Positions 4,626-63,700 of a stretch of 64,000 nucleotides of DNA are shown here, one piece after another; the first letter of the stretch is position 1, and every line of letters starts with the position of its first letter. Position numbers and translations under genes: made by a program. Source of the stretch: Leucoraja erinacea (lineage: Eukaryota); NCBI RefSeq assembly GCF_028641065.1, contig NC_073403.1, positions 10,478,001 to 10,542,000 on the forward strand, written 5' to 3'. The notes under the pieces are model-generated. The model worked only from the letters and a program-made list of their open reading frames with translations. It was not told the DNA's origin and did not search any database.

Positions 4626-4781
4626 ACCTCACCACCTCCTTTGTTGCACAGATAATGTCCACCATCTCCCCACAAGTTCTAACCCAGGAAGTTGCTTGGC
4701 CAGACAATACCACTGCTTTCAATAACACCGACTTACCAACACATGGTTTAAAGCATTAACATGGGGACTGCAGTATCTTAC

Positions 4782-4958
4782 CTTGTTTACAAGAACAACC
4801 ACTTTGCCTTGACCTTTCTTTTGGTCCAGATGGTGCCTGGCAACAAACACAGCTGCCCGTGTCTTGCCTGCACCTGTCGGGAGCCAAATGATGATATTTT
4901 TCCCCTCGAGGGCAGGTTGCACCACCTCCCACTGATAGTCACGCAAATCAATTTGCAT
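4782..4958 (-). CDS. DHX58: DHX58/LGP2 first coding exon (Q motif, Walker A)
   Basis: [39 protein letters not shown]...VVLVNK; no CARD seen upstream; acceptor at 4966-4967, GTAAG donor at 4781; adjacent to KAT2A as in human. Confidence 0.95.
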
Positions 4959-28194: not shown

Positions 28195-28843
28195 TAGAAA
28201 CATAGAAACATAGAAATTAGGTACAGGAGTAGGCCATTCGGCCCTTCGAGCCTGCACCGCCATTCAATATGATCATGGCTAATCATCCAACTCAGTATCT
28301 TGTACCTGCCTTCTCTCCATACCCTCGGATCCCCTTAGCCACAACGGCCACATCTAACTCCCTCTTAAATATAGCCAATGAACTGGCCTCGACTACCCTC
28401 TGCGGCAGAGAGTTCCAGAGATTCACCACTCTTTGTGTGAAAAAGGTTCTTCTCATCTCGGTTTTTAAAGGATTTCCCCCTTATCCTTAAGCTGTGAACC
28501 CTTGTCCTGGACTTCCCCAACATCGGGAGCAATCTTCCTGCATCTAGCCTGTCCAACCCCTTAAGAATTTTGTAAGTTTCTATAAGATCCCCTCTCAATC
28601 TCCTAAATTCTAGAGAGTATAAACCAAGTCTATCCAGTCTTTCTTCATAAGACAGTCCTGACATCCCAGGAATCAGTCTGGTGAACCTTCTCTGCACTCC
28701 CTCTATGGCAATAATGTCCTTCGTCAGATTTGGAGACCAAAACTGTACGCAATACTCCAGGTGTGGTCTCACCAAGACCCTGTACAACTGCAGTAGAACC
28801 TCCCTGCTCAAATACTCAAATCCTTTCGCTATCAAAGCTAACA
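28195..28843 (-). mobile_element. young CR1 LINE 3' fragment
   Basis: ORF 28365-28844 [19 protein letters not shown]...; (TTTCTATG)n tail on the minus strand. Confidence 0.93.
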
Positions 28844-28965
28844 TAATTAACTCGGTGATGGTGCTAGCGATAGTGGCCTGGTGCTCGTCAGTGGGGTCCT
28901 GCCATAGTCCACATCAAATGACTAGTAGCATGCATTTTAATCATTTAAATTAAAAATTAACCCAC

Positions 28966-31232: not shown

Positions 31233-31385
31233 NNNNNNNNNNNNNNNNNNNNNNNNNNNNNNNNNNNNNNNNNNNNNNNNNNNNNNNNNNNNNNNNNNNN
31301 NNNNNNNNNNNNNNNNNNNNNNNNNNNNNNNNNNNNNNNNNNNNNNNNNNNNNNNNNNNNNNNNNNNNNNNNNNNNNNNNNNNNN
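31233..31385. other. assembly gap (153 N) inside an HE1-like SINE (~31070-31445)
   Basis: run of N; both flanks are collinear with the SINE at 47065-47378. Confidence 0.98.
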
Positions 31386-48000: not shown

Positions 48001-49840
48001 CTGCAGTTCCTTGTTTCTAAAATGTACATTGACCTTTACGGCAAAAGGCTTCAAGTAAAAGGGCAAAAACGTCTTCCTAATATCATGCAGAGCTTTGTTA
48101 AATCATATTCAGACTATTGCATAAATCTTTTGCCTTAAAAAGATTGTTGCTGTAGGAGTGCAGTAAAGATTCACCAGAATGTTTCTGAATGGCAAGTCAG
48201 TCATATGATGAGATTGAGTAGGTTGTGCTTCTTTGTAGTTTAGAAAAGGAAGAGGTGACCTCAAGTAAACAAAATTCTTAGAGCTCAATAGGAAAAACAT
48301 GAGAAGGATGTTTTCGCCAGGCTGCACAGTCTTTACCCAGAGTGGGGTAAGTCAAGAACCAGAGGACATAGGTTTAAGGTGAGAGGGGAAAGATTTAAGA
48401 AAAAGGATCAACTTTTTCCACGCAGAGGGTGGTGGGTATATGGAGTGAACTGCCAGAGGGGATAGTTGGTGCAGGTACTATAACAATGTTTAAAAGGCAT
48501 TTGGACAGGTACATTGATAGGAAAGGATTGGAGGAATATGGGCCAAATGCAGGCAGGTGGGACTGGTATAGATGGGATATCTTGGTTAACATGGGCAAAT
48601 TGGGCCAAATAGCCTGTTTCTGTACTGCATGACTGTTTCCCCAGGCGTAATCTGGAATATGAGGGGGGTGGGGGTGGGAGGAAGAGGGGCTCAGAGTCTG
48701 AAAAAAATAGGGCAGGCCATTGGAGACTGAAAAGAGCAATTTCTTCATTCACATGATGAATGTTTGTAATTCTCTTCCAAAGTGATAACGTGCAGGTAGC
48801 GATTAGTTTAACTTGGCATCATATCCAGCACATATATTGTAGGGTAAAAAGCCTGTTCCTGCGCTGTACTGTTCTATGGGAGAGGGCAACGGAAACACAT
48901 TCATTCACTACATTGAAAACCAATGTAAGAATAATCAATGAATGTTAGGATTGGGCAGAAAATGGCATTGAGGTACCATGATCTTGTTGAACAGTGAAGC
49001 ATGTGCAAGAAATAAATGACCTATTCCAGCTCCCACTTCTTAAACTCTTTATCTCTCCCCAGGCTACATACTCAAGTTAAATTTAATAGCACAAAGAAAA
49101 GACCAGACTAAATCCAGGAAGTCTAAAATTAAAGCAGAAAATACAAATAATACTGATCAGGTCAGTACAATTCTATGAAAGTAGAGTTAACAGTTAAAAC
49201 CCAACGTCTTTCCAATTACCATTGATATCCACAACTTCCAGTAGCATTGAACCATTCCGCAAATCCTATGCCCTCTGTTCTTTCCAAATACATCCAAATA
49301 CTTCCCACCTTTACTGCAAATAAATGACTGCAGGCTGAAAACATCCTTTAAATATCTCCTTCACGTCGTCTCATTCCAATTTCTAAAACACACTCCAGCA
49401 TCTGTGCTTCAATCGGTCACCTTTTACCTGTTGGTACATTTAAGTCATGTTCAAGTATGTTATTTTTATTCATCATGACAAGAAATTCAGAGGCGACAAA
49501 TTTGCTGAATGCTTTGTCTAGCCACAGTAACTCTCTTGAGCCACAACACAACGTTAAAACAACGTTTTTGTCCGTGCCCCGTGTTGAATGCAGCCTCTCC
49601 TACTTTACCCGGTGGCCAGTCTTCATGTGTGATCTCTGGGTTATTGTGGGAGTGGCAGTAACTGAGTAATGGAGGAAGGAAGCTTTTCATTCACCACATG
49701 GAAACAGTTCAATTCTTGAATGATCACTGTGTCACCTTGTTAGTGAAAAGATATTGAATTGGGACCTAGCCCGAGTCTGCAGAGGCAGGATGATGATGAG
49801 GAGGAGGAGTCGTCCAGCCGGGCACACACTCTGCTCTTAC

Positions 49841-50092
49841 CTTGCACGCCGAGAAAATCCCCAGTTTCTCCAATTTCTTGGCCCGTGGGAAAGCGCGGAC
49901 CTGGGCCTTGCGCTGAACCGAGCGTTGCTGGCTGCTGCTGGCACCGGGCCGGGCAGGGTCGGCCGGGCTCGGGGCGGCGGGAGAGGCCGCCGTTTGCGAC
50001 GGGAAAGGCGCTTGAGCCCGGCCTTGCGAGGCTTGCGCTGCCTCAGCCATCACCGTGCCCCCCTCTGCCATGGAAACCACCGAGGACGCCAT
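49841..50092 (-). CDS. KAT2A: KAT2A exon 1 (start could be 50092, 50071 or 50050)
   Basis: ...QQRSVQRKAQVRAFPRAKKLEKLGIFSACK|GTAAG in a CpG-rich region; the 18 exons sum to 2427 nt in frame; KAT2A rather than KAT2B from QRKAQVR, EKFFYFK and DHX58 adjacency. Confidence 0.93.
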
Positions 50093-50192
50093 TGCACATG
50101 CGCGCCGGGTGCACCTTGGGAGATGTAGTCATTGCTTTGTCGGTGGGGGCAATGCGCATGCGTATTGACGTGGGCATCTTGGGAAATGTAGT
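50093..50192. promoter_or_regulatory. KAT2A proximal promoter: two ZNF143/SBS and two NRF1-like motifs
   Basis: GCACCTTGGGAGATGTAGT (50111-50129), GCATCTTGGGAAATGTAGT (50174-50192), TGCACATGCGCG, TGCGCATGCGTA (50153-50164). Confidence 0.75.
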
Positions 50193-50254
50193 GTGCAAGA
50201 TGGAATTGCAGATGCGGGTTTACACCATAGAAAGGCACAAAAAGCTGGAGTAAC

Positions 50255-51282
50255 TCCACCCCCTATTCCCAATTCCTCCGCCTACGCCGCATCTGCTCCC
50301 AGGATGAGACGTTCTACACCAGGGCATTGGAAATGTCCTCGCTCTTCAGGGGACGGGGATTCCCCTCCTCCAACATAGATGAGGCTCGCACCAGGGTCTC
50401 TTCCATACCCCGCAACACTGCTCTCTCTCCCCATCCCCGCACTCGCAACAAGGTCAGAGTCCCCCTAGTCCTCACCTTTCACCCCACCAGCTGGCAAATA
50501 CAACAAATCATCCTCCGCCATTTTCGCCACCTCCAACGTGACCCCGCCACTCGCCACATCTTCCCATCTCCCCCCATGTCTGCCTTCCGCAAAGACCGCT
50601 CCCTCCGCAACTCCCTTGTCAATTCTTCCCTTCCCACCCATACCACCCCCTCCCCGGGCACTTTCCGTTGCAACCGCAAGAAATGCAACATCTGTCCCTT
50701 TACCTCCCCCCTCGACTGCATTCAAGGACCCAAGCAGTCATTCCAAGTGCGACAAAGGTTCACCTGTATCTCCTCCAACCTCATCTACTGCATCCACTGC
50801 TCTAGATGCCAGCTGATTTACATCGGTGAGACTAAGCGGAGGTTGGGCGATCGTTTCACCGAACACCTCCGCTCAGTCCGCAAGTACCTATCTGAACTCC
50901 CGGTGGCTCAGCACTTCAACTCCCCCTCCCATTCCCAATCCGACCTCTCTGCCCTGGGTCTCCTCCATTGCCAGAGTGAGCAACACCGGAAATTGGAGGA
51001 ACAGCACCTCGTATTCCGCCTGGGTTGCTTGCGTCCGGTTGGCATGAACATTGAATTCTCCCAATTTTGCTAGCCTTTGCTGTCTCCTCCCCTTCCTTAA
51101 CCCTCGAGCTGTCTCCTCCCATCCCCCCTGCCCTCGGGCTCCTCCTCCTCCCTTTTTCCTTCCTTCACCCCCCCCTCACCCCCCATCAGTCTGAAGAAGG
51201 GTTTCGGCCCGAAACGTCACCTATTTCCTTCGCTCCATAGATGCTGCTGCACCCGCTGAGTTTCTCCAGCATTTTTGTGTAC
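50255..51282 (+). mobile_element. 5'-truncated Penelope-like element with intact GIY-YIG endonuclease frame
   Basis: ORF 50327-51073: RVPLVLTFHP...CNRKKCNIC...FTCISSNLIYCIHCSRCQLIYIGETKRRLGDRFTEH...VAQHFN; inverted piece of its own tail at ~50200-50255. Confidence 0.93.
51191..51218 (+). ncRNA. minimal hammerhead-ribozyme-like core in Penelope terminus
   Basis: CTGAAGA-AGGG-TTTCGG-CCC-GAAA-C-GTC; near-identical intact core at 43447-43474. Confidence 0.55.
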
Positions 51283-51539: not shown

Positions 51540-51900
51540 GTGATGTAAGGGTTACTTGAAGTTCGAGAAGTCAAAAAACCGCAGAATTGTAAACTGCCCA
51601 AGCGAAATATTAAGTGCTGTTCCCCCAACTTGCGTTTGGCCTCACTGTCAGTGGAGGAGGCCCAGGACAGAGAGGTCTGTGTGGGAATGGGAGGGGGAGT
51701 TAAAGTGTTGAGCAATCAGGTAGGTTTAGGCAGACGCAGACTGAGCGGAGGTGTTCAGCGAAACGATCGCCGAGCCTGCGCTTGGTCTGGCCGATATGTA
51801 GGAGTCTACACCTGGAACAGCGGAGGCAGTAGATGAGGTTGGAGGAGGTGCAAGTGAACCTCTGCCTCATCTGACAAGACTGTCGGGGTCCCTGGACCAA
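51540..51900 (-). mobile_element. second Penelope-like GIY-YIG fragment
   Basis: QRFTCTSSNLIYCLRCSRCRLLHIGQTKRRLGDRFAEHLRSV. Confidence 0.88.
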
Positions 51901-52046
51901 AGATCCTATAGCAATAGGATATTTGCCCTGGACAGAGTGTAGAGGGGAAGGTATAGGGACAGGTGCTGCACGCAAAGATCCGCTATAAGATCTTTGGTTG
52001 CACGGTCATGTACAAGAGACAACAGCGCGCCGGCGTCCCGCCCACG

Positions 52047-52310
52047 GCAGTTTGGGATATGTAGTCCATCACTTCTTAAAGCGCTACAAACGAATTAAAA
52101 CTCACTTCTTGTTCACAGTTTAATTAAAGCTAGTTAAGCACATCTAATGTTTGTGCTTTAAGCAAAAAAAATAATAATGGATAGATGAGGACTTTAATTT
52201 GATTTGCAAGGCATTGTGGGTGTTGTAGTTTGACGGTTGGCATCGGGGCGCGTGCGCACACTTGCGAAGTTGACGACGTCGAGCCGAAGTTCGTTGGGAG
52301 CTTTTCCTAA
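52047..52310 (+). promoter_or_regulatory. RPL41 promoter: two ZNF143/SBS motifs, NRF1-like motif, TOP/TCT-like pyrimidine initiator
   Basis: GCAGTTTGGGATATGTAGT (52047-52065), GCATTGTGGGTGTTGTAGT (52211-52229), GCGCGTGCGCA, CTTTTCCT at 52301-52308 starting 16 nt before the ATG. Confidence 0.75.
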
Positions 52311-52316
52311 CCGACC

Positions 52317-52328
52317 ATGAGGGCCAAG
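52317..52328 (+). CDS. RPL41: ribosomal protein L41 (eL41/eS32) exon 1: MRAK
   Basis: ACC-ATG AGG GCC AAG|GTGAGT consensus donor. Confidence 0.95.
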
Positions 52329-52649
52329 GTGAGTGAACAGTAACTGACAGAAAAATGATGGAATAGAATCCGGTCATTATGATAAAATAAGTGCTGAGTA
52401 ATCAATTTGAGGGGGAAATGTGTTTTCTTTTTACTTTTTGCCCGTCGTATCCATTTTGAGGGCCGCGACCACGCAGTGGGTTCTTGTTCTGACCTGTTGA
52501 TCGATAAACAGTAGGTGCTGGGGGAGAAACTGCGATCGACCGCACTTCAGGCACGATTCCACCTCGCTCAGCAATTCAAACTTTACTGTTAAACGATCCC
52601 ATCAACTTTTCTGCAACACGCGGTCGACCGTCACCTCCAGCACTTCCTC

Positions 52650-52812
52650 CCTGCACCCGCTGAGTTTCTCCAGCTTTTCTGTGTAACCTTCCTGCACCCG
52701 CTGAGTTTCTCCAGCTTTTCTGTGTAACCTTCCTGCACCCGCTGAGTTTCTCCAGCTTTTTGTGTAACCTTCCTGCACCCGCTGAGTTTCTCCAGCTTTT
52801 CTGTGTAACCTT
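52650..52812 (+). repeat. 41-bp tandem repeat x4 derived from the Penelope terminal repeat
   Basis: CCTGCACCCGCTGAGTTTCTCCAGCTTTTCTGTGTAACCTT units. Confidence 0.9.
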
Positions 52813-53977
52813 CGATTCTCCAGCATCTGCAGTTCCCTCTTTAACACTCCCTCAGAGTTTGTCGCTTTACAGGAGGCTGAAATGTTGAGTGAAAAACAAC
52901 CTGCTGTATGAACTAATTGGGTCAGGCTGCATCAATTGATATCACATTGATGGTCACAATATTATGATGGATAAAGGCTGTTAACACTATCCGAGAGCCT
53001 ACACCACTCTGGTCACGCTCTCGTAGAATCTGACAACATGGACACGGACCCCTCGCCCTTAGGCCCAACTTGCTCGTACATGTCCCATCTACTCGTCTCA
53101 CCTGCCTGCGTTTGGCTCATATCCCTCTAAATCTATCCCATCCATGCACCCGTCTAACTTTCTCTTAAACGTTGTGAATGTACCTGCCTTCTCTGGTAAC
53201 TCGTCCAATACACCCACCGCCCTTTGTGTAGAAAAGGTTACCCCTCGGGTTCCTACTAAATCTCCCTTCCTCACTTTAAACCTATGTTTCAGCCTATCCT
53301 CGGTTCCCCTACTCTGGGCAAGAGGCTGTGCATTTATTTATCCGATCTATTCCTCTCATAATTTTGTACACCTTTATCAGATCACCCTCAACCTCCTGCA
53401 AGGACGATCTTGCCACTTATATTGTGAAGACGGTACAGGAGGAGTCTGAGGAGGTTCAAGATCCTCAGATCCAAGAACAGTTTAATTAACCATCAGGATA
53501 TTGACCTCTGCCATTCACCACAACCCTACCTTGGCAACTATGATCTGCTTTGTTTTGGTTGCACTACATGCTTATGGTCTGGTGACCTAATATTTGTGTG
53601 TTGGTTTTATTATCATATGTCCTGAAACGGAATAGTGCAGAGCCCCCAGTTCCACATAGTTTGGAACCTATTTGGTGGTTGTAATATATGGAATGTACAA
53701 TCTGAACAATCATGGAAACAGAGACTACATTTATTATTGTAGGTTAGATGATGGATTTATATATATTTTTCTCTTGATTGTACCATAAGAGTGCTAAGAG
53801 AAAGTTATTTAATTTTACACAGGAGGATGCCAAGATAAAGTTATTTCATTTTACTGAATGTGTGTATGGAACTGCTATTTATTGGATATTACGTTAAACT
53901 TTATTTTGATTCTAAAATAATACAAGAGTAAATGTGCCAACTTTCTACTAAAACTAATTGATTTATTTCTTCTACAG

Positions 53978-54000
53978 TGGAGGAAGAAAAGGATGCGGAG
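53978..54000 (+). CDS. RPL41: RPL41 exon 2 (23 nt): WRKKRMR(R)
   Basis: branch-like ACTAAT, TTTATTTCTTCTACAG|TGG AGG AAG AAA AGG ATG CGG AG|GTCTGT. Confidence 0.95.
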
Positions 54001-54408
54001 GTCTGTATGTCTTTTACTTTTTTCCAGCTCTTTATTAAACTTAATAATACACTTAAAAATGGTGAAATCTGGTTCAGGTTTTCATTCAATCATTCATTAA
54101 TATATTTAAGCATATGTTTTGAGACATAAATTTGATTTGAAATAACTGCCTGCTTGACATTTTTCAAAAGATTGTGCGTTTTATTGAAATGTTTCCTGCC
54201 ATTTCCATTCAACATTAAGGGAAATTTGCATAATTTATGTAGATTGGTTATTGCATGTGACCAATCATAGTAGAGTAGTATCATTAACCCCACCTTACTG
54301 TATGCTTTATATTAGCATCCACTTCCTACATTAAGTAGCCTTGGAAGCGATAGTGATGAATTAACAACTAACAACCTGCTGTACCACTATACTATGTGTT
54401 ACAATTAA

Positions 54409-56390
54409 ACATAGAAACATAGAAAATAGGTGCAGGAGTAGGCCTGCACCGCCATTCAATATGATCATGGCTGATCATCCAACTCGGTATCCTGTGAAAA
54501 GGTTACTTTTATAACTACTAAACAGGTTCGCTCCTTAATAAACAGACACCACACAAACTGTTTGGTAGACCAGTTCAAACCTTTACTTATTATCGGCCGA
54601 TGGAAGGAAGCGAGAATTCCAGTCAAGTGACCAATGTAGACACTTAACTGTGCTCAGCCACCTTCCCTGAACAACAGAATTATATTGCATTTTATAGTGT
54701 TTCTTTGTCACCTTAGCACATTCCACAGACGTTAGTCATGGTCAGAGGTACAGGAAAAGGTTTCTACAGAATGCATCACATCAAAGGCATTTTGTCACAT
54801 GGTACAAGATATATTAATAATAATAATAATAATAATAACTTTATTTGTTAAGCACCTTAAAAACAACCAAAGCTGACCAAAGTGCTGTACAGAAAAAAGA
54901 AAACAAGCAAGACATCATAAAACAGGCAGAACAACAGAACATACAACTAACACGAGGCGCATAAATTACATACAAAAATCCAAACAATAAATTAAAAAAC
55001 ATAAAACACGAGTACGAACAACGCAGCAAAACCAAGCAAATAAAGCTAATAAACAAAACACATGGTGGCCATTCTTCAGGTTTTACAGCTAGACATTTTT
55101 ATCTTTCATACAATCCCGACACAGCAAAGGCACGGTCCCCTCTCTTCTTCTTTGGCTCACCTCGGAGCCTGATCATCTGACCTGAGAGGCGGGGAGGGCA
55201 CTAAGGGTGAAGAAGCTTAGGTAGGACGGGGCAAGACCACTTAGGGATTACTTAAAAGAATTTTAAAACGAATCCTATACTGAATCAAAGTGGAGAGAGT
55301 AAAAGGTGAGAAACATGATCTGCTTCGTTACCAGTCCGAACAGCCATTCTGTACCATCTGGATGGGCGAAGGACATACAGGACACTAATCCAGCCGGGTG
55401 GTAACAAAGGCGTGGATTACTCTACTTCAAAATCGATTTTTGCCAGCTGACTCTTTAGCCCTCCAGTCAAATCTAAGCTCAGGGTCCACTTATCCCCACT
55501 TGATGTTAGGTTTGAGACAATATTTTTACCTCATATTAAAAACATTGGCCATTGGGTTTACGACATTTTATCTTTCTATCTCTCACACCGTCCCTCAACC
55601 TGAGGCACTTGGTTTAGCATCTACTTTGAGACTCAAAGAGATGTAGCAGCTCTCGTAACCTCCTCCCTCGCTAGCCCAGACTTCAAAGCCATGACTTAGC
55701 TCCTTCTCTACTTATATTGGGAGACAATATTTTTTTAGTATTTATTATCTCACACACCGCAACCTGAGGCAAGCCTAATTTGAGACTAAATATAAGCTGT
55801 AAGCTAGCCCAGAAGCCAATTTAATATCTTCTTATATTTTTAACTAAAATTCAGCTTCATCACCTGTATCTGCCTTCTCTCCATACCCCCTGATCCCTTT
55901 AGCCACAAGGGCCACATCTAACTCCCTCTTAACTATAGCCAATGAACTGGCCTTAACTACCTTCTGTGGCAGAGAATTCCAGAGATTCACCACTCTCTGT
56001 GTGAAAAATGTTTTCCTCATCTCGGTCCTAAAAGATTTCCCCCTTATCCTTAAACTGTGACCCCTTGTTCTGGACTTCCCCAACGTCGGGAACAATCTTC
56101 CTGCATCTAGCCTGTCCAACCCCTTAAGAATTTTGTAAGTTTCTATAAGATCCCCCCTCAATCTTCTAAATTCTAGCGAGTACAAACCGAGTCTATCCAG
56201 TCTTTCTTCATATGAAAGTCCTGACATCCCAGGAATCAGTCTGGTGTACCTTCACTGTACTCCCTCTATGGCAAGAATGTCATTCCTCAGATTAGGAGAC
56301 CAAAACTGTACGCAATACTCCAGGTGTGGTCTCACCAAGACCCTGTACAACTGCAGTAGAACCTCCCTGCTCCTATACTCAAATCCCAAA
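54409..56390 (-). mobile_element. young CR1 3' fragment inserted in the 5' LTR, itself interrupted
   Basis: tail at 54409-54494, body 55863-56385 nearly identical to the copy at 28300-28825. Confidence 0.9.
54495..55862. mobile_element. TG...CA solo-LTR-like insert with 4-bp TSD, containing an L2-like 3' end
   Basis: CCTG duplicated at 54491-54494 and 55863-55866; (AAT)n tail and minus-strand RGDRAFAV-like L2 remnant at ~54815-55400. Confidence 0.6.
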
Positions 56391-56523
56391 GACACATAAA
56401 GATGACTTTGAACTCCAGACCTGTGTAACATAATAATTTACATGGTGTCAGTCAGCGTGAAGTAACCCACTTCGTCCGTATATCGGGTTTTATTTGTGTT
56501 TTATCAGTTCCATTTGTATCACT

Positions 56524-57390
56524 ATGGCTGAATCGTACCGCAAGCCAGCGCAGCTCATCTTTGATTCAGACATCGGGGAACGATGGAGGCTATTCGAAAT
56601 CGAGTACGAACACTATATCAACATCGTCTATCGTAATGAACCAGATGCTGTCAAAGCTTTGATTCTACTAAACCTGGCAGGACCTGAGGCTCTGATGAGA
56701 GCACAGACTTTTGACTTCGCGCCAGCGGTTCTCGACGACAACAATCAGGTAGTTGTACCTGCTGAGACTATGCGTGACCCTAATGTTTTACTGCGTAAAT
56801 TCAGGGAACTATGCGACCCACCCTTTAACCGTATCTTAAAAAGAGGAAAATTCTTCGCGAGACACCAGCTTCCCGATGAGCCTGTGGAAAGATTTATTTG
56901 TGATTTGAAAGATATGGCTCTGCAATGCCACTTCGGGGTTATGTCCAACAAATTAATCAGGGACATGCTTGTCATTGGCATGACTGATCAAAACCTAAAG
57001 ATTAAGTTGCTGCAGAATGCTGACTTAACCCTTGAACAAGCTGTGCATGCCTGCCGTACGTCAGAGATTGTGGCTACACTTAGTGACCAGGTTGACACTC
57101 AGAAAAAGAGTATAAACTTGACGGGTTTCAACAAACGCCCAACCACGACAGCTAACAGAAGATTTATGAACGAACCGCCGCAAACGGCTAACCGGGGATT
57201 TATCAATGAGCCGCCGCAAAGATGTCCGAATTGTAACTATTTCCACAACAAGGGACGAATGTTCTGTCCTGCGAACGGCAAACCATGTAACTACTGCAAG
57301 AAAATGAATCACTTCGCCGTTGCCTGCAGGTCCCTTGGGAACAGACCTTCCAGCTCAGCGTCTAATCTGCACCTGTTGCAACAAGACTAA
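56524..57390 (+). CDS. retrotransposon Gag with CCHC zinc knuckle (intact frame)
   Basis: MAESYRKP...FFARHQLPDEPVERFICDLK...LIRDMLVIG...LTLEQAV...CPANGKPCNYCKKMNHFAVAC. Confidence 0.85.
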   Translation: MAESYRKPAQLIFDSDIGERWRLFEIEYEHYINIVYRNEPDAVKALILLNLAGPEALMRAQTFDFAPAVLDDNNQVVVPAETMRDPNVLLRKFRELCDPPFNRILKRGKFFARHQLPDEPVERFICDLKDMALQCHFGVMSNKLIRDMLVIGMTDQNLKIKLLQNADLTLEQAVHACRTSEIVATLSDQVDTQKKSINLTGFNKRPTTTANRRFMNEPPQTANRGFINEPPQRCPNCNYFHNKGRMFCPANGKPCNYCKKMNHFAVACRSLGNRPSSSASNLHLLQQD

Positions 57391-58400
57391 ACATTTCCAG
57401 ACACACAGGACCAGCTCGAAGCTGCCCATGAGGATGATCCAATTAGCGCATATGAAGAGTCCACTGTGCGCACACACTCCTACACTCCGCTGGTATGCTT
57501 TCGGATCCATCTGTATCGATGTTCATTAACAATAAACCTGTGAAGGCCAAATTGGAAGCTGGTGCCACAGGTGTTTAAACCAGCCGCGGTCCAGAAGTGC
57601 ATCGAGGAGAAACACAACATCCGGAAACGATCCTATGACAAATCCAATAAACCACTGAAGCTACTGCTGCAGGGTCAAGTCGTCCGTCTGCAGACTACTC
57701 TGGGACATTCCCGTCTAGGTTTCGTTGTCGGCCCGTGCCAAGGAACCCCACTCCTACCTTGTCAACGTCGATGGTGCCCTGCACAGATGGAGCCGCCAAA
57801 ACTTGCTGCTTGTAAAAGAACCCCGTCCACCACCAGCCGATCCTTTTGCTCCACCTCTGCTGTTCAACCCGTCTGCTGCTGCCACTATCACTAGTCCAAG
57901 CATGTCCCGTTCTCTGCCACGACCGGCGATCCCGTCTAACAACAACACTACCTCTCCCGCATGCTCATCCTACCGGTCGCCTATAGCGTCCCCAGCTGCC
58001 TTCTCCCTTCTGGGTTCACTGCCTCCCTCCCCCACTAATTCTTCTGGTACATGGGGAGAGGGGTTGGTTCGCACGCGTTCGGGTCTTATTAGTAGACCGC
58101 CTGATAACGGCGAGTACGTTTAAATTTACGCTTACCCGTGCGTTATTATATTCGCTCTTTATGGGGACGGATGTAGATTGGTTATTGCATGTGAACCAAT
58201 CATAGTAGAGTAGCATCATTAACCCCACCTTACTGTGTGCTTTATATTAACACCCACTTCCTACATTAAGTAGTCTTGGAAGCGGTAGTGATGAATTAAC
58301 AACTAACAACCTGCTGTACCACTATACTATGTGTTACAATTAAAGATGACTTTAAACTCTAGACCTGTGTAACATAATCATTTTAAATTTATATTAGTAA

Positions 58401-59476
58401 CTAGACCAAGTGCAGATCTGTTCCCCCAACGTGCGGTTGTGGGGGGGGGGGGGGGGGGGGGGCGGGCGGCATGCAGCGTCACACACACTGACTACCCCCC
58501 CCCCCCCCACCACGCACTCACGCTAATTACCCCCCTTGATATTATATTGATATTATTAATTTGCTCCTTTTACCCCATAAACACCCTATCTACTGACGCA
58601 TAGCCCCCAACTTGCAGTCACACCTAGAGAGGGGGGGGGGTAGAGAGTGGGGGGGAGAGAGATGGGGCAGAGAGAGAGGAGGGTGAGAGTGAGGGGGGTG
58701 CTGATAGGGGGGTGAGGGGGGGAGAGGTGGGGAGCAGTGAGGGGGAGGTAGGGTGGAGGGAAAGAGGGGGAGAGAGGGTGTGCTGAGAGGGGAGGGGGAG
58801 AGGTGGGCAGCAGGAAGGGGGAGGGGTTAGGGGAGTGTGGGGGAGGGGGGGGGGAGGGGAGGTGGGGGGGAGAGGAGGGGGGGGAGAAAAAGGGGAGAGG
58901 GGGAGAAAAAGAGGGTAGAGAGTAAAGGAGGGGGGAGAAAAAGAGGGGGAGAGGAGAGGAGAGGAGAGAGGGGGAGAACCTAAAAAACATTTTAGAACCA
59001 AAAAAGACACATTCTGCAAGCATTGTAGAACCAAAAGAGACACTTTTTGCAAACATTTTAGAACCAATAGACACTTTTTGCAAACATTTTAGAACCAATA
59101 GACACATTCTGCAAGCGTTTTAGAACCAATAAGGCCACTTACGTTTGAGTAGACATGTGTTCAGTGTTATTCACAGTTCAGAGAAACGTGACCCTCTGCT
59201 TTCCTCCATCTTGACGAGACTATGAGGCACACCACTTCTTGGTTTTATAGTCCCTCCCCCCTGCCGCCAGCAGGGGCAGCAGGGAGAATGGGAAATTTTG
59301 TAAAAACATTAATATCTGTCATTTTTCATCGACGTGAAAAATCATCAGCACACATACGGCGGAGGGGGGCTCTGAGCAAGATGGCCAAAAATGACGGCCG
59401 TAGGTGGCGCCGTTCTCTCGGAAATTGCAGCACAGATGGCCAAAACCGGTCAAGAACAGACTTTTAGTAATATAGA
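58401..59476 (-). mobile_element. non-autonomous Helitron
   Basis: minus strand A|TCTATATTACT...GGTCTAG|T, subterminal hairpin CCCCCAAC-GTGCG-GTTGTGGGGG, no TSD; internal GA-rich tract and ~30-bp tandem repeats (58985-59130). Confidence 0.75.
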
Positions 59477-60533
59477 TAGATAGATACTTAGAATGTTTGT
59501 AGCTATTTACAATGTCTTTCATGACAAAGCTTTCACTATAAGCTTAAAGATAAAGTATATTTTTGCACCCTTCCCCACCCAAATGGTCTGATATTAGTAT
59601 TCCAGTAACAGTAAGCCCTTGGGTACTTAATAACGGAATGAGGCAAGTTTAGTTGAACAGACGAATGTTGTGATCAATCCATTGATAACCATGATGTGGT
59701 GTATCGACCCAAAACATCGATAATTCCTCTCCCTGACAGATGATGCTCAACCGGCTGAGTTCCTCTAGATTGTTTGTTGCTCCAGATTCCACCATCTGCA
59801 GTCTCTTGTGTCTCTGTTATTTCACATTTTTCTCTGCTTTACCATTTTTATGTAAGTTGCAAGCTTTAATATCTGCACTCCTCAGAGGTGTACAGCTATA
59901 TAAAAAAACATTTAGATAGAGGAGTGGTTAGGTCAGTACAATGACCAAAAACAATTTGAAAGAATAGGACACGTTCTTAGAGATTTATAAGCACGTAAAC
60001 AATATCAGTAGAGACAAATAAAATTCTGAAATGTCTGTATTGCTGTTGATAACAGGTGAACATGCAATAGATAAATACCTGGAATATCCCATTTTATCCC
60101 AGTATTTCATAGTCATCAAATCCAGCATTTGAGCACAAAGTATTTTCTATTTTGGCTTTTATGTGGTATTTTGTTTAGAAAGAATGTAAAACAAAACTGT
60201 GATGTAGTAAATACCATTGCTTCTCTGCCACCCTTAGACTCAACTCTTTTTTCTGTCTAATGACTTCAACTTGTTCCATCGCTTAACCTTATCCAGTTTT
60301 AATCCCAAAGCATTAGGAACTTGCTTTCACTTGACTAGCTGTGTAGTTCCAGCATTTGTTTTCATTGCATAAAATGGTTCATGGAGGACGATAAAGATTT
60401 TATCCACTTTGCAGCATATAAACATTATTATACATTTTTGCCAAAAGAATTTAAACTTTATTGCTGTCTGCATAATTTTTGTAAATGCACATGGCAGCCT
60501 GTGATTTATTTTTAACTTTCTATTCCTGAATAG

Positions 60534-60576
60534 ACTGAAGCGCAAGCGGAGGAAGATGAGGGCGAGGTCAAAGTGA
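60534..60576 (+). CDS. RPL41: RPL41 exon 3: (R)[13 protein letters not shown]
   Basis: pyrimidine tract + TAG|A CTG AAG CGC AAG CGG AGG AAG ATG AGG GCG AGG TCA AAG TGA; spliced product is the canonical 25-aa length. Confidence 0.95.
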
Positions 60577-60719
60577 AACCTTGTTTATGACTGCAGTGAT
60601 TGGCAGCTGCTTTACAGTTCAACTTCAGTGGTTAATGGATGATTTTCAAGCTTGTGTTCTTCAGAGACTCTTTGTGTATTGGTTATTCAACTTTTATGAA
60701 TTGTTGGTTTTGGTATAAC

Positions 60720-60725
60720 AATAAA
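60720..60725 (+). terminator. RPL41 polyadenylation signal
   Basis: AATAAA ~145 nt after the stop codon. Confidence 0.7.
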
Positions 60726-63700
60726 ATTGTTTTAAAAATCTGATGTGCAGTGTAAGGAATAGCTACATTGCTATGACATTTGTGAATTTTCTCATTTATA
60801 ATGATGCCAAAGTAAGGTGATTTTTTGCCATTTCTATCTGGAACAAAAAAATGTTTTTCATTTTTTGATATTCTGGTAACTATTGGATCAGGCTGTGCCT
60901 TGCCTTGTTTAATGGTTTATAGATTCAAATTTCTTGCCCAATGGCAATCCTTTTCTCAACAGAAGGAAGATTGGGAATTATGAATGTTTATAATTTTCTG
61001 TGTCAGTGGATTATGGATGCTTAGTCGCTGAACTGAATTGCATGGCATTGTTCAATACACTTTTCAGCTGTTGAGGAATTTGAAATAAGGTTTGGTTGAT
61101 GGTGTGGAGCTATAGTCCAATCTCAAATGGAGAGCAGGCTGAAGGTTAGCAAGTTTTAAATGTTAATATCATGCCGTTTATTATTTCCCTATGCCTAGAC
61201 ATTGATCTGAAAGGTCAAACTAGATAGATATCAGGAATACATTGATGTGCCTCCTGTTGTAAAGAGTTGCCCTATTTAGAAAATAGGTGCAGGAGTAGGC
61301 CATTCGGCCCTTTGAGCCAGCACTGCTGAATTTTGCATTATGAATTTGTATCCTTATCGATGGACACTTCTGATTGGAGTTCTCCAGCTGGGTTAACAGT
61401 ATTCAATGTGACGGGTTTACTTGGGCAGTTGAACAAGTGTGCTTTTACCTGTTATGGTAAATTCCATGTACAGCGTCACAGTAGACACTGAATTGCATGA
61501 AAGGGGTTAATCAAATGCTGTTTTGTGTCAATCAAATTAATCTTTATCTGCCGTTAAGTGACCCATTTTATTCAACTTTTTTTGTAGGCAGGAATGAAAA
61601 AACACAATGTCAATATTTCCTTTTTTGTTCAGATATTGTGGGAATTTTCAGTGAATATGGAAAGTGTAATCAGTGGTGGGGTGCATCTTTTAATCCCCAT
61701 GTTGAGATTGTGACTTTGTGTGAAATATTTCCAAAGGTATTGTCAGATATTTTATCTATTGCATTACATTTCTTTTTAAATTTTCATAATTTTTGATGAG
61801 CTGTGGTTGTCAATATAGCTGGTGGGTAATAGAATCCCTAACCACTTCTAGAAACATAATGGGACTTTGATCACGCTACAACTTCCAAAATATATTTTAT
61901 TTTGCCCATTCTAAACTGGAATAAAGAGAAAATTTCAACTACAATTGAATCACATTGAATGTGATTCAACTGTCTTGTTGCATAAAATTTCTCACAAGTG
62001 CAGTACAAATGGTACAATTGATTTTTGGCAACAGAGTATAACATGCAGTGGGATTCCACGTGTGCATTTGGTGCAAACTACTGCTGGTGAATATAAATGC
62101 TGTTGGAATCAGACAACAACCTGTGTTATTTCTGCCAAAAAAGGATGAATCATAAGGAGCCATTTGACCGATTTTCATATTGAATTAATATTGTTTCTTT
62201 TTGCAACAATAGCAGATAGCAAGCCTCCAATACATGCAAGTGATCGAATTATAAGATTACAATGTTGCCCCTAACGATATCGCACAATGTCCATTGTTAA
62301 AGCTTTTTCCTTACTGGTTTCAAACCTGCAGCCTAAAATCTCATTAAAAGCAAAACTTATTGGGCTGTTTAACTGCTGAGGAAGCAGGTGATGGTTTGGC
62401 TCTAACTTTCAGTGGAGTGAGACAAAAGATGAACAGCAGTAGACAGAAAATGCTGGAGTAATTCAGCGGGACAAGCAGCATCACTGGAGAGAAGGAATGG
62501 GTGAAGTTTCGGGTTGAGACCCTTCTCACAGCAGTGTTGCTGATAGAGTTATATGAAATTACAAGTTGCATAGATAGTTTAAAAAAAAAAATCCACATAG
62601 AGATATAATCTTAATCTGGGGGTTAAGGCAAATTACTCAAGTTTTAGAAGGGATCTGAAGTAGACCATTTTCATCCAGAGTGTTGTTGAAATATGGAGTG
62701 CACTATCTTTGCGGATGGTGAAAACGCATGCACACCATTTAAGTATCTAGAAGCAGGTAAATTTGTATACGGTGACTGGATCAAATAAACTTGATTAATA
62801 AAAACAAGCACAGTATGGAAACAGGCCCCCTCTATTCTATAACACTCCACAGAACCTCAACGTTCACTGTGAAAGTCCTATCCTGGTTTGACTTCCCAAA
62901 ATGTAATGCGTTACACTTATCCGAACCAAACTTAATTTGCCCTTGGCCCACTACTTAGCTGATCAAGATTTTACTGTGATTCTTGATAATCTTGACTGTC
63001 TACCTATTCCAGTGCCATATGCAAACTTGGCAACCCTGCCTTGCACATTCTCATCCAAATCACCAATATAGATGACTTCATACTTGATGGGTGTCATAGA
63101 TATGACAGCCCCCTGTTTCTATGCGTTACACTATTTTGCACTGAATCAAATAAATGTCCCAAGTTGCAAGTTGCATCAGGAACGTCAAATATTTAAATGA
63201 TGATTGGATGTTGATGAAGACTAGTGAAAATTAAGCTTAAAATATTCAACAAAAATAGCTCAAAAGCAGATGATGTACCAGATTGTACATTAGTTTTCAT
63301 GACATTTCATCCGGCATTGGCTCTTAATACTAATTACTGTTCTGTACTGTGTAATGCAACATAATTTCAGGATTCACAATGTTTGACACAATAATGCTTA
63401 AATACCATTAACCTTTTCAAAATGTCCTGCTTGAAGTATCGCAGTCATTATGTTCTGAATCCGTGATCCAGTCGTCTAAATTAATAATTAGGAGCCAGGA
63501 TTATTCTTCCAAAGTAGTAGATTTTTTCCTTCATTTCATCTAAAGGAATTAATTAGCAATGGTAGGCTGGTTTTGTAATGATGAAGGAATCTATCCGAAC
63601 ATCCGTCGAGTTTATTTATATCCTTAAGAAAAACAAGCATGCACCCTTCACTATGTAAGGTACATTAATAATTCCACACCCACATCAATGTGATTAACTT

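What the first reader, a model, noticed from the sequence alone, without database searches (positions are those of the whole stretch)
52317..60725. Hidden three-exon RPL41 gene next to KAT2A: candidate retained 2R ohnolog
Seen: micro-exons of 12, 23 and 43 coding nt with proper splice sites splice to [25 protein letters not shown], with a TOP-like initiator and a polyA signal. Having introns, it is not a retrocopy. Known (from recall): human RPL41 lies at 12q13 near ERBB3/RAB5B, whereas KAT2A-DHX58-RAB5C lie in the paralogous 17q21 region; human has Q22 while yeast and fly have A22, as here. Inference: this is a second RPL41 ohnolog lost in mammals, or evidence of reciprocal loss. Ribosomal protein ohnologs are rarely retained, and a 25-codon gene is easily missed by annotation.
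Basis: partly seen in the sequence, partly recalled or inferred. Interest (0 to 1): 0.85.

Follow-up and report, generated by a model that had tools for sequence, protein, structure and literature searches.

The report
Expressed RPL41 gene beside KAT2A
A real, spliced and expressed gene for the tiny ribosomal protein eL41 lies next to KAT2A in a cartilaginous fish, not beside ERBB3 as in humans, perhaps because the two lineages kept different ancient duplicates.

Summary
Three micro-exons on the + strand (coding 52317-52328, 53978-54000, 60534-60576) have GT-AG introns and together give the 25-residue eL41/RPL41 product quoted in the finding. Poly(A) RNA-seq from two related organisms covers only exon 3 and its 3'UTR. 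In 54 of 72 reads (X21) and 88 of 135 reads (X24), the part of the read that runs past the exon-3 acceptor spells the end of exon 1 followed by exon 2. Both predicted junctions are therefore read directly.

The gene lies head-to-head with KAT2A. The local order is DHX58, KAT2A, RPL41, and the host is a chondrichthyan, probably a batoid.

Papers place human RPL41 at 12q13 with RAB5B and ERBB3. They give the human 17q21 order as LGP2, GCN5L2, HspB9, RAB5C, with no RPL41. A position inside the paralogous block favours a 2R positional paralogue over a random move.

The scan had noted the KAT2A-RPL41 pair before, on this same window (s1-909466), not on other DNA.

The parts
52000..52600 (.). CpG-rich promoter region of RPL41, separate from the KAT2A exon-1 CpG island at about 49800-50200
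   Evidence: CpG observed/expected is 1.06-1.21 in the 200-nt bins from 52000 to 52599, against mostly below 0.9 in the neighbouring bins
52301..52328 (+). Exon 1: inferred 16-nt 5'UTR starting at a C followed by pyrimidines (CTTTTCCT), then the start codon and 3 more codons (coding 52317-52328)
   Evidence: Sequence. The last 9 letters are read in 54 X21 and 88 X24 RNA reads joined to exon 2. The 5' end is inferred from the X21 median loose-end length of 48 and was not read directly.
52329..53977 (+). Intron 1 (1649 nt, phase 0), GTGAGT ... pyrimidine tract, AG
   Evidence: It is absent from the loose-end consensus of the RNA reads.
53978..54000 (+). Exon 2, a 23-nt micro-exon
   Evidence: Sequence. 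It is read in full in RNA loose ends of X21, X24 and the X1 contig.
54001..54004 (+). Four letters (GTCT) kept by a minor alternative donor (next letters GTATGT); this shifts the frame
   Evidence: Seen in 3 X24 reads, against 88 with the main donor, and in one X1 contig. Sequence.
54001..60533 (+). Intron 2 (6533 nt, phase 2), filled with transposon remains (LINE-tail ORF 55847-56251 on the minus strand, gag-like ORF 56461-57387 on the plus strand)
   Evidence: Neither RNA run shows depth at 60200-60523. The ORFs have no Pfam hit.
60534..60740 (+). Exon 3: the last 14 codons including the stop (to 60576), then a 3'UTR of about 165 nt with AATAAA at 60720-60725 and a transcript end near 60740
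   Evidence: RNA depth is confined to 60524-60766 in X21 and X24, X21 is stranded for a + RNA, and an X1 contig covers 60534-60689. The AATAAA at 60720 is the only such signal.
49781..50092 (-). First coding exon of KAT2A, the head-to-head neighbour (start codon about 2.2 kb from the RPL41 start); the rest of KAT2A runs down to 14276
   Evidence: tblastn of chondrichthyan KAT2A proteins gives 15 HSPs from 50092 to 14276. The last exon contains a bromodomain, Pfam E=4e-11.

Best explanation
This is a working gene for ribosomal protein eL41 (RPL41) in a cartilaginous fish, probably a batoid. Transcription starts at a pyrimidine-rich, TATA-less, CpG-rich promoter about 2.2 kb from the KAT2A start, on the opposite strand. 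Two introns of 1.6 and 6.5 kb are removed at the predicted GT-AG sites. The roughly 260-nt mRNA is polyadenylated about 15-20 nt after the single AATAAA and encodes the 25-residue basic peptide of the large ribosomal subunit. These steps are shown, apart from the exact first base.

The following is inferred. The gene sits inside the block DHX58, KAT2A, [RPL41], hsp30/HSPB9, which is collinear with human 17q21. Bony vertebrates carry RPL41 in the paralogous 12q13 block (RAB5B, ERBB3, RPL41). The most economical reading is that both positions descend from one pre-2R position near a RAB5/KAT2 pair, and that this lineage kept the 17q21-type copy while bony vertebrates kept the 12q13-type copy. Whether this fish also keeps a 12q13-type copy is unknown.
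For: Gene and expression:
- Exons, splice sites and reading frame.
- RNA depth only on exon 3. 54 of 72 laid X21 reads and 88 of 135 laid X24 reads carry exon 1 plus exon 2 letters in front of the exon-3 acceptor. Strand fits a + RNA. Transcripts end just after the poly(A) signal.
- The same exon 3 is present in a DNA contig of a third related organism, X15.

Position:
- KAT2A and DHX58 lie on the minus strand to the left.
- An hsp30 pair is noted 4.7 kb beyond the window end (scan note s1-909467, unchecked).

Human maps:
- 17q21 order LGP2; GCN5L2; HspB9; RAB5C (PMC1523211 table).
- 12q13 interval with RAB5B, SUOX, IKZF4, RPS26, ERBB3, RPL41, MYL6, SMARCC2 (PMC2909911 passages).

Other vertebrates:
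- A database gene model fuses RAB5C and KAT2A in an eel, so they are adjacent there too.
- The tilapia survey states that RPL41a/b lie in synteny conserved with other vertebrates, and that 3R duplicates of RPL41 have persisted. Long survival of two RPL41 copies after a genome duplication is therefore possible (PMC7072992 passages).
- A Fugu synteny paper holds RPL41 together with WNT1, WNT10B, ARF3, ERBB3 and 12q13, and holds none of GCN5L2, GCN5 or RAB5C (search listings only).
- Differential ohnolog loss between cartilaginous and bony vertebrates ('hidden paralogy') is described for other genes (listing and abstracts).

That 12q13 and 17q21 are 2R paralogons (HOXC/HOXB, ERBB3/ERBB2, RAB5B/RAB5C, STAT2-6/STAT3-5) is established knowledge that I recall; no call tested it.
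Against: - No search of this genome for another RPL41 was possible.
I do not know whether sharks, chimaeras or any bony fish share the KAT2A-linked position.
- The RPL41 synteny figure of the tilapia paper (Figure S2) is a supplement I could not see.
- The Fugu evidence is co-occurrence of words only, not a read passage.
- A 25-residue protein allows no gene tree.
- The tilapia survey lists only RPL3, RPL7, RPL22 and RPS27 as retaining 2R duplicates.
- Read counts are modest: about 10 reads per million records in both RNA runs. That could mean another, stronger copy exists. However, the tool drops human-like reads, and very short mRNAs are under-sampled, so this is inconclusive.
Confidence: 0.55

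Rival explanations
1. Relocated orthologue. There has only ever been one retained RPL41 since soon after 2R. In the line leading to this fish (or, conversely, in the bony-vertebrate stem) the small gene was moved by a chromosomal rearrangement or DNA-level transposition. Its landing in the paralogous block would be coincidence.
For: The gene is tiny and self-contained with its own promoter. The KAT2A-RPL41 spacer and both introns are full of mobile-element remains: a Penelope-like GIY-YIG ORF at 50231-51070, a gag-like ORF and LINE tails. Surveys report one RPL41 in tetrapods and gar, and no retained 2R RPL41 pair (PMC7072992).
Against: The insertion point lies inside a block otherwise collinear with human 17q21 (and note s1-909467). 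It is also close to where RAB5C is expected, mirroring RPL41's closeness to RAB5B in human. By my rough estimate, a random move would land in such a place well under 1% of the time. No footprint of a move (flanking duplication, co-transferred 12q13-type sequence) was seen in the window, though I made no dedicated search for one.
Confidence: 0.3
2. Two copies retained. This fish has both the KAT2A-linked and an ERBB3/PA2G4-linked RPL41, and mammals lost the first.
For: RPL41 duplicates have survived more than one genome duplication elsewhere: tilapia RPL41a/b, Atlantic halibut, and more copies in carp and salmon (PMC7072992 passages). Read counts at this locus are modest for a ribosomal protein gene.
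Against: Nothing in any call shows a second copy. The scan's notes on this genome mention RPL41 only in this window: 1 finding for the word, with no note for ERBB3, PA2G4 or RAB5C. Those notes cover only 954 windows. The read depth is unreliable because of read filtering and the short transcript.
Confidence: 0.12
3. Non-functional or artefactual: a decaying duplicate, transcriptional noise, or a misassembly that joins RPL41 to KAT2A.
For: The assembly join was not checked with long reads. A 4-nt alternative donor gives a frame-shifted minor mRNA.
Against: The frame is intact and the splice sites are canonical. 142 spliced reads were seen in two organisms. There are no differences between organisms A and C in the 43 coding letters of exon 3, nor in the 30-letter exon-1/exon-2 consensus, while the 3'UTR shows 3 substitutions and one 4-nt deletion. 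Both flanks are collinear with human 17q21.
Confidence: 0.03

Closest known systems
Vertebrate RPL41 / eL41 gene (human 12q13.2; tilapia RPL41a and RPL41b)
   Same: It encodes a 25-residue basic product from a small intron-containing gene with a pyrimidine-rich start and one poly(A) signal. The tilapia genes also encode 25 residues (PMC7072992 table).
   Different: The neighbourhood differs: KAT2A/DHX58 here, against RAB5B-ERBB3-RPL41-MYL6 in human. Three exons are seen here, and the X21 median loose-end length of 48 argues against a further upstream exon. The tilapia genes are listed with 4 exons. The gene spans 8.4 kb here, against 0.9-1.9 kb in tilapia. The residue-22 difference from human is recalled, not tested.
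Ribosomal protein gene pairs retained from 2R (RPL3, RPL7, RPL22 and RPS27 families, as listed in PMC7072992)
   Same: If the 2R reading is right, this is another ribosomal protein gene whose two 2R copies both survived for some time.
   Different: In those families both copies coexist in one genome and have diverged. Here only one copy is seen, and the two lineages would each hold a different one. The proteins would be nearly identical.
Hidden paralogy (differential ohnolog loss) between cartilaginous and bony vertebrates, e.g. the Nodal/Lefty, globin and Kazald studies in the listing
   Same: Genes that pass as one-to-one orthologues sit in different 2R paralogons in different gnathostome lineages.
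   Different: Those cases rest on gene trees plus synteny across many species. Here a tree is impossible (25 residues), and synteny is known for one chondrichthyan window only.

Membership tests
eL41 / RPL41 ribosomal protein gene | Open frame of 25 codons giving a very basic Arg/Lys-rich peptide | tested here: met
   the three slices give 78 nt and a 25-residue product plus stop, identical to the peptide quoted in the finding.
eL41 / RPL41 ribosomal protein gene | Significant match to the family profile (Pfam Ribosomal_L41) or to eL41 chains of solved ribosomes | not tested
   The exon peptides (4, 7 and 13 residues) are below the 20-residue minimum of the profile and PDB tools. The identity with eL41 rests on recall of the family sequence.
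eL41 / RPL41 ribosomal protein gene | Transcribed, spliced and polyadenylated as an mRNA | tested here: met
   poly(A)/oligo-dT RNA reads lie only on exon 3, and 54 reads (X21) plus 88 reads (X24) carry exon 1 and exon 2 letters at the acceptor.
eL41 / RPL41 ribosomal protein gene | Product incorporated in the 60S subunit | not testable with these tools
   Needs proteomics or a ribosome structure from this species.
TOP mRNA (5' terminal oligopyrimidine) | Transcript starts with C followed by an unbroken run of 4-15 pyrimidines | tested here: inconclusive
   CTTTTCCT starts 16 nt before the ATG. The X21 median loose-end length of 48 letters fits a 5' end there. The X24 median of 56 is longer, possibly because of library adapter letters. 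The first base itself was not displayed.
2R ohnolog of the ERBB3-linked RPL41 | Lies in a chromosome block paralogous to the block that holds the other copy | tested here: met
   The window order DHX58, KAT2A, RPL41 compares with human 17q21 LGP2, GCN5L2, HspB9, RAB5C and human 12q13 RAB5B ... ERBB3, RPL41. The 12q13/17q21 paralogy itself is established knowledge that I recall.
2R ohnolog of the ERBB3-linked RPL41 | The other copy, or its empty or decayed site, is identified in the same genome or lineage | not testable with these tools
2R ohnolog of the ERBB3-linked RPL41 | Outgroups (amphioxus, cyclostomes) show one gene in the undivided ancestral block, and the duplication dates to 2R | not tested
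   No outgroup DNA was reachable, and a 25-residue protein gives no datable tree.

The most novel reading that the evidence does not exclude
The eL41 genes of cartilaginous and bony vertebrates are not orthologues but 2R paralogues. Both copies survived until the two lineages split. This batoid lineage then kept the copy in the HOXB-type block (beside KAT2A), and bony vertebrates kept the copy in the HOXC-type block (beside ERBB3/PA2G4). The loss of the HOXC-side copy might be tied to the known reorganisation of the HoxC region in elasmobranchs (abstract of PMC13097845 as listed). A bolder sub-case is that this fish still has both copies and so two sources of eL41.
Probability: 0.4. Interest if true: 0.55.

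Novelty: new member of a known kind. Interest (0 to 1): 0.38.

Why it matters
As a gene it is ordinary: every eukaryote needs eL41. The value is comparative. Ribosomal protein genes are treated as textbook single-copy orthologues. A case where two gnathostome branches kept different 2R copies would be a clean, easily checked example of hidden paralogy in a dosage-sensitive housekeeping gene. It would also place an RPL41 gene next to the KAT2/RAB5 pair in the pre-duplication vertebrate ancestor. In practice, it reminds annotators that a 25-codon gene split into 12-, 23- and 43-nt coding pieces over 8 kb can only be placed with RNA evidence.

Tried and rejected
- Rfam scan of the whole window at gathering thresholds gave 0 matches, so no snoRNA or other known RNA is hosted in the RPL41 introns.
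- I planned to read the DNA upstream of KAT2A in stingray, gar, bichir, frog, bird, turtle and teleosts. No cross-species locus was read.
- Scan notes: the word RPL41 appears only in this window. ERBB3, PA2G4 and RAB5C appear in no note. 'ribosomal protein ohnolog' returned only an unrelated RPL9 note. A look-up by exon-3 sequence was blank.
  - RPL41+KAT2A: 7 papers, none about linkage.
  - RPL41+ohnolog: 2 papers, both on yeast.
  - rpl41+synteny: 8 papers, two useful.
  - A six-term search that showed the Fugu paper holds RPL41 and ERBB3 but none of GCN5L2, GCN5, RAB5C or PA2G4.
  - A badly built six-term shark search that did not force rpl41.
  - rpl41+shark: 4 papers, all irrelevant.
  - Adjacency phrases such as 'kat2a rpl41' and 'pa2g4 rpl41': 0 papers.
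  - Hidden paralogy + cartilaginous: 29 papers.
  - rpl41+fugu: 3 papers.
  - The Fugu wnt1-region terms.
  On these searches, I found nothing in print on an RPL41-KAT2A linkage.
- Only the abstract and references of the Fugu synteny paper (PMC2447035) are held. Gellner and Brenner 1999 (PMC310722) is not held.
- Figure S2 and Table S2 of PMC7072992, which may show RPL41 synteny and copy numbers, are supplements that I could not see.
- Expression level as a test for a second copy was rejected as unreliable. The tool filters human-like reads, and the mRNA is only about 260 nt.
- Selection test between organisms A and C: 0 differences in 73 coding letters, against 3 substitutions and 1 indel in about 164 UTR letters. 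At the UTR rate, about 1.8 differences would be expected in the coding letters, so this is not significant (my arithmetic).
- No RAB5C exon lies in the window: residues 1-280 of P0010 give no HSP.

Full report
**What is in the sequence.**
On the + strand the window holds an ATG at 52317 followed by three codons and a GTGAGT donor. A 23-nt exon lies at 53978-54000, behind a pyrimidine tract and AG. A third exon starts at 60534, also behind a pyrimidine tract and AG, and runs 43 nt to a stop at 60574-60576. A script that joined the three slices gave a 78-nt frame and the 25-residue product quoted in the finding. The exon-2 and exon-3 peptides each occur once in the six-frame translation of the 64 kb. 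The only AATAAA or ATTAAA between 60577 and 61000 is at 60720. Sixteen letters before the ATG the sequence reads CTTTTCCT. The 200-nt bins from 52000 to 52599 have CpG observed/expected of 1.06-1.21, forming a small CpG island separate from the one over KAT2A exon 1. The whole window gave no Rfam match at gathering thresholds.

**RNA evidence.**
The look-up of sequencing runs listed 24 runs under coded names. My single read-laying run went to 60200-61000, meaning exon 3 and its flanks. Exon 2 and exon 3 cannot both fit within the 6,000-letter limit, and reads anchored in the roughly 200-nt exon 3 show the upstream exons as loose ends.

- Reads laid: the stranded poly(A) run X21 (organism C) laid 72 reads of 7,335,232 records read. 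The oligo-dT run X24 (organism A) laid 135 of 12,895,792.
- Depth: in both runs, depth is zero from 60200 to 60523, rises at the 60524-60550 bin, and falls to about zero in the 60740-60766 bin.
- Strand: all X21 pairs have the first mate on the minus strand. The tool says this is the usual sign of a + strand RNA.
- Junctions: 54 X21 reads and 88 X24 reads have a loose end just before 60532. Its 30-letter consensus (agreement 0.99 and 1) is the last 9 letters of exon 1 followed by the first 21 letters of exon 2. The two remaining exon-2 letters, AG, fit the intron end as well, which is why the loose end starts at 60532 rather than 60534.
- Conclusion: both predicted junctions, 52328/53978 and 54000/60534, are read in the same molecules. 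Table 5 of the output shows no 'joints', because exons 1 and 2 were outside the laid stretch.
- 5' end: the X21 median loose-end length of 48 fits a 5' end about 15-16 nt before the ATG, at the pyrimidine run. It argues against a further upstream exon. The X24 median of 56 is somewhat longer, and I cannot say why; library adapter letters are one possibility.
- Minor form: 3 X24 reads and one X1 contig keep four extra letters after exon 2 by using the next GT (54005). This shifts the frame.

**Which organism.**
125 of the 135 X24 reads are at least 99% alike and show no listed differences, so the window is most likely organism A. X21 (organism C) differs at 60628, 60670 and 60694 and lacks 4 letters at 60671, all in the 3'UTR. 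A DNA contig of X15 (organism B) spans the whole stretch with one substitution and several indels in the flank. The locus therefore exists in three related organisms.

To place them, I aligned KAT2A proteins from the database to the window.
- Over all exons, identity is 83% for stingray and devil ray, 81-82% for six sharks, 79.6% for the chimaera, and 74-78% for seven bony vertebrates.
- In the variable first exon it is 78-79% for the two batoids, 60-68% for the sharks and 55% for the chimaera.
- Only 15 of the 32 cluster members were listed, and I compared 11 of those 15.
- The host is a chondrichthyan, probably a batoid outside the stingray group. That last step is inference.

**Neighbourhood.**
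- KAT2A occupies 50092 down to 14276 on the minus strand, with 15 tblastn HSPs. Its last exon holds a bromodomain at Pfam E=4e-11.
- DHX58 exons lie at 4761-4955 and 33-236 on the minus strand. The first has DEAD/ResIII Pfam hits.
- Between the KAT2A start and the RPL41 start lie about 2.2 kb with Penelope-like ORFs. The Pfam GIY-YIG hit has E=5.8e-4, below the curated cutoff. This agrees with scan note s1-909466.
- No RAB5C exon is in the window.
- Scan note s1-909467 reports an inverted hsp30 pair 4.7 kb beyond the window end. I could not check it.

**Comparison with what is published.**
- A human 17q21 gene list reads LGP2; GCN5L2; HspB9; RAB5C; KCNH4; HCRT... STAT5B; STAT5A; STAT3 (PMC1523211, table passage). 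This is the same order as the window, but without RPL41 between KAT2A and the small heat-shock gene.
- Human RPL41 lies in the 12q13 interval with RAB5B, SUOX, IKZF4, RPS26, ERBB3, MYL6 and SMARCC2 (PMC2909911, passages).
- The tilapia survey of ribosomal protein genes states several things (PMC7072992, passages). Tilapia has RPL41a and RPL41b as 3R duplicates. [quoted passage not shown] The duplicates lie in synteny conserved with other vertebrates. The genes with retained 2R duplicates are RPL3, RPL7, RPL22 and RPS27. Its 13 species include no cartilaginous fish, and its RPL41 synteny is in a supplement I could not open.
- A Fugu-human synteny paper holds RPL41 (3 times) together with WNT1, WNT10B, ARF3, ERBB3 and 12q13, and holds none of GCN5L2, GCN5, RAB5C or PA2G4 (search listings only). 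This fits my recollection that the Fugu wnt1 region of Gellner and Brenner 1999 contains RPL41, but that paper is not held.
- A database model that fuses RAB5C and KAT2A in an eel shows those two genes are adjacent in a teleost.
- The ten searches found nothing in print on RPL41 beside KAT2A.

**Interpretation.**
- Shown: this is a functional-looking, expressed RPL41 gene with introns, so it is not a retrocopy.
- Inferred: the evolutionary reading. 12q13 and 17q21 are 2R paralogons; this is established knowledge that I recall (HOXC/HOXB, ERBB3/ERBB2, RAB5B/RAB5C, STAT genes). In human, RPL41 lies a few genes from RAB5B. Here it lies inside the block that holds RAB5C in human and eel. By my rough estimate, a chance relocation would land this close to a RAB5 paralogue in a paralogous block well under 1% of the time. 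Differential retention of 2R copies predicts exactly this position.
- Supporting context: RPL41 duplicates have survived since 3R in teleosts, so survival of two copies from 2R to the chondrichthyan-osteichthyan split is not far-fetched. Hidden paralogy between these lineages is known for other genes (listing and abstracts).
- My estimates: about 0.55 that the gene is a 2R positional paralogue of the ERBB3-linked gene, about 0.3 that it is a relocated orthologue, and about 0.03 that it is an artefact or dead copy. Nothing in my calls shows a second copy, and nothing excludes one.

**Limits.**
- The single-exon peptides are too short for those tools. Calling the product eL41 therefore rests on the well-known family sequence, which I recall, and on the finding's own text.
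- The comparison of residue 22 with human, yeast and fly was not tested.
- Whether public annotation already lists this gene could not be checked, so 'hidden' is unverified.
- Read depth says little about rank among ribosomal protein genes, because the tool filters human-like reads and the mRNA is very short.

**Verdict.**
The gene is an ordinary eL41 gene. Its position is the interesting part, and it is best, though not securely, explained by 2R paralogy.

Noticed in passing
window 54001-54006: A second donor 4 nt downstream of the exon-2 donor (GTCT kept, then GTATGT) is used in 3 X24 reads, against 88 with the main donor, and in one X1 contig. It is not seen among the 54 X21 reads. It shifts the frame and would replace the basic C-terminal half with an acidic tail.
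   Followed up: partly
window 50231-51070 (+) and 51703-52005 (-): Two ORF remains of Penelope-like elements with a GIY-YIG motif (Pfam E=5.8e-4, below the curated cutoff, for the first; no hit for the second) fill most of the spacer between the KAT2A and RPL41 starts. This agrees with scan note s1-909466.
   Followed up: partly
window 56461-57387 (+): A 309-residue open frame in RPL41 intron 2 has two Cys-His knuckle-like motifs near its end and looks like a retroelement gag. It has no Pfam hit at E<=0.01. A LINE-tail ORF lies next to it at 55847-56251 (-), and a near-copy of that tail lies at 28368-28913 (-) in a KAT2A intron.
   Followed up: partly
window 58589-59119 (-): Pro/Ser-rich low-complexity open frames in all three frames of the minus strand, in a stretch with 0 CpG in 400 nt (58600-58999) despite 61-66% G+C. 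Probably a simple-repeat block.
   Followed up: no
database proteins P0010, P0151, P0167, P0227: Public gene models that merge neighbours: RAB5C+KAT2A (Synaphobranchus kaupii), KAT2A+DHX58 (Aldrovandia affinis, Umbra pygmaea), and a small heat-shock protein+KAT2A (source without organism name). They are annotation errors, but they serve as evidence of adjacency in those species.
   Followed up: partly
window 60628-60694: Organism C (X21) differs from the window by G>T at 60628 (46 of 46 reads), C>A at 60670 (14 of 16), a 4-nt deletion at 60671 (14 of 16) and T>A at 60694 (15 of 15). All lie in the RPL41 3'UTR. Organism A (X24) shows none of these.
   Followed up: yes
window 31233-31385: A run of 153 N inside a KAT2A intron.
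   Followed up: no
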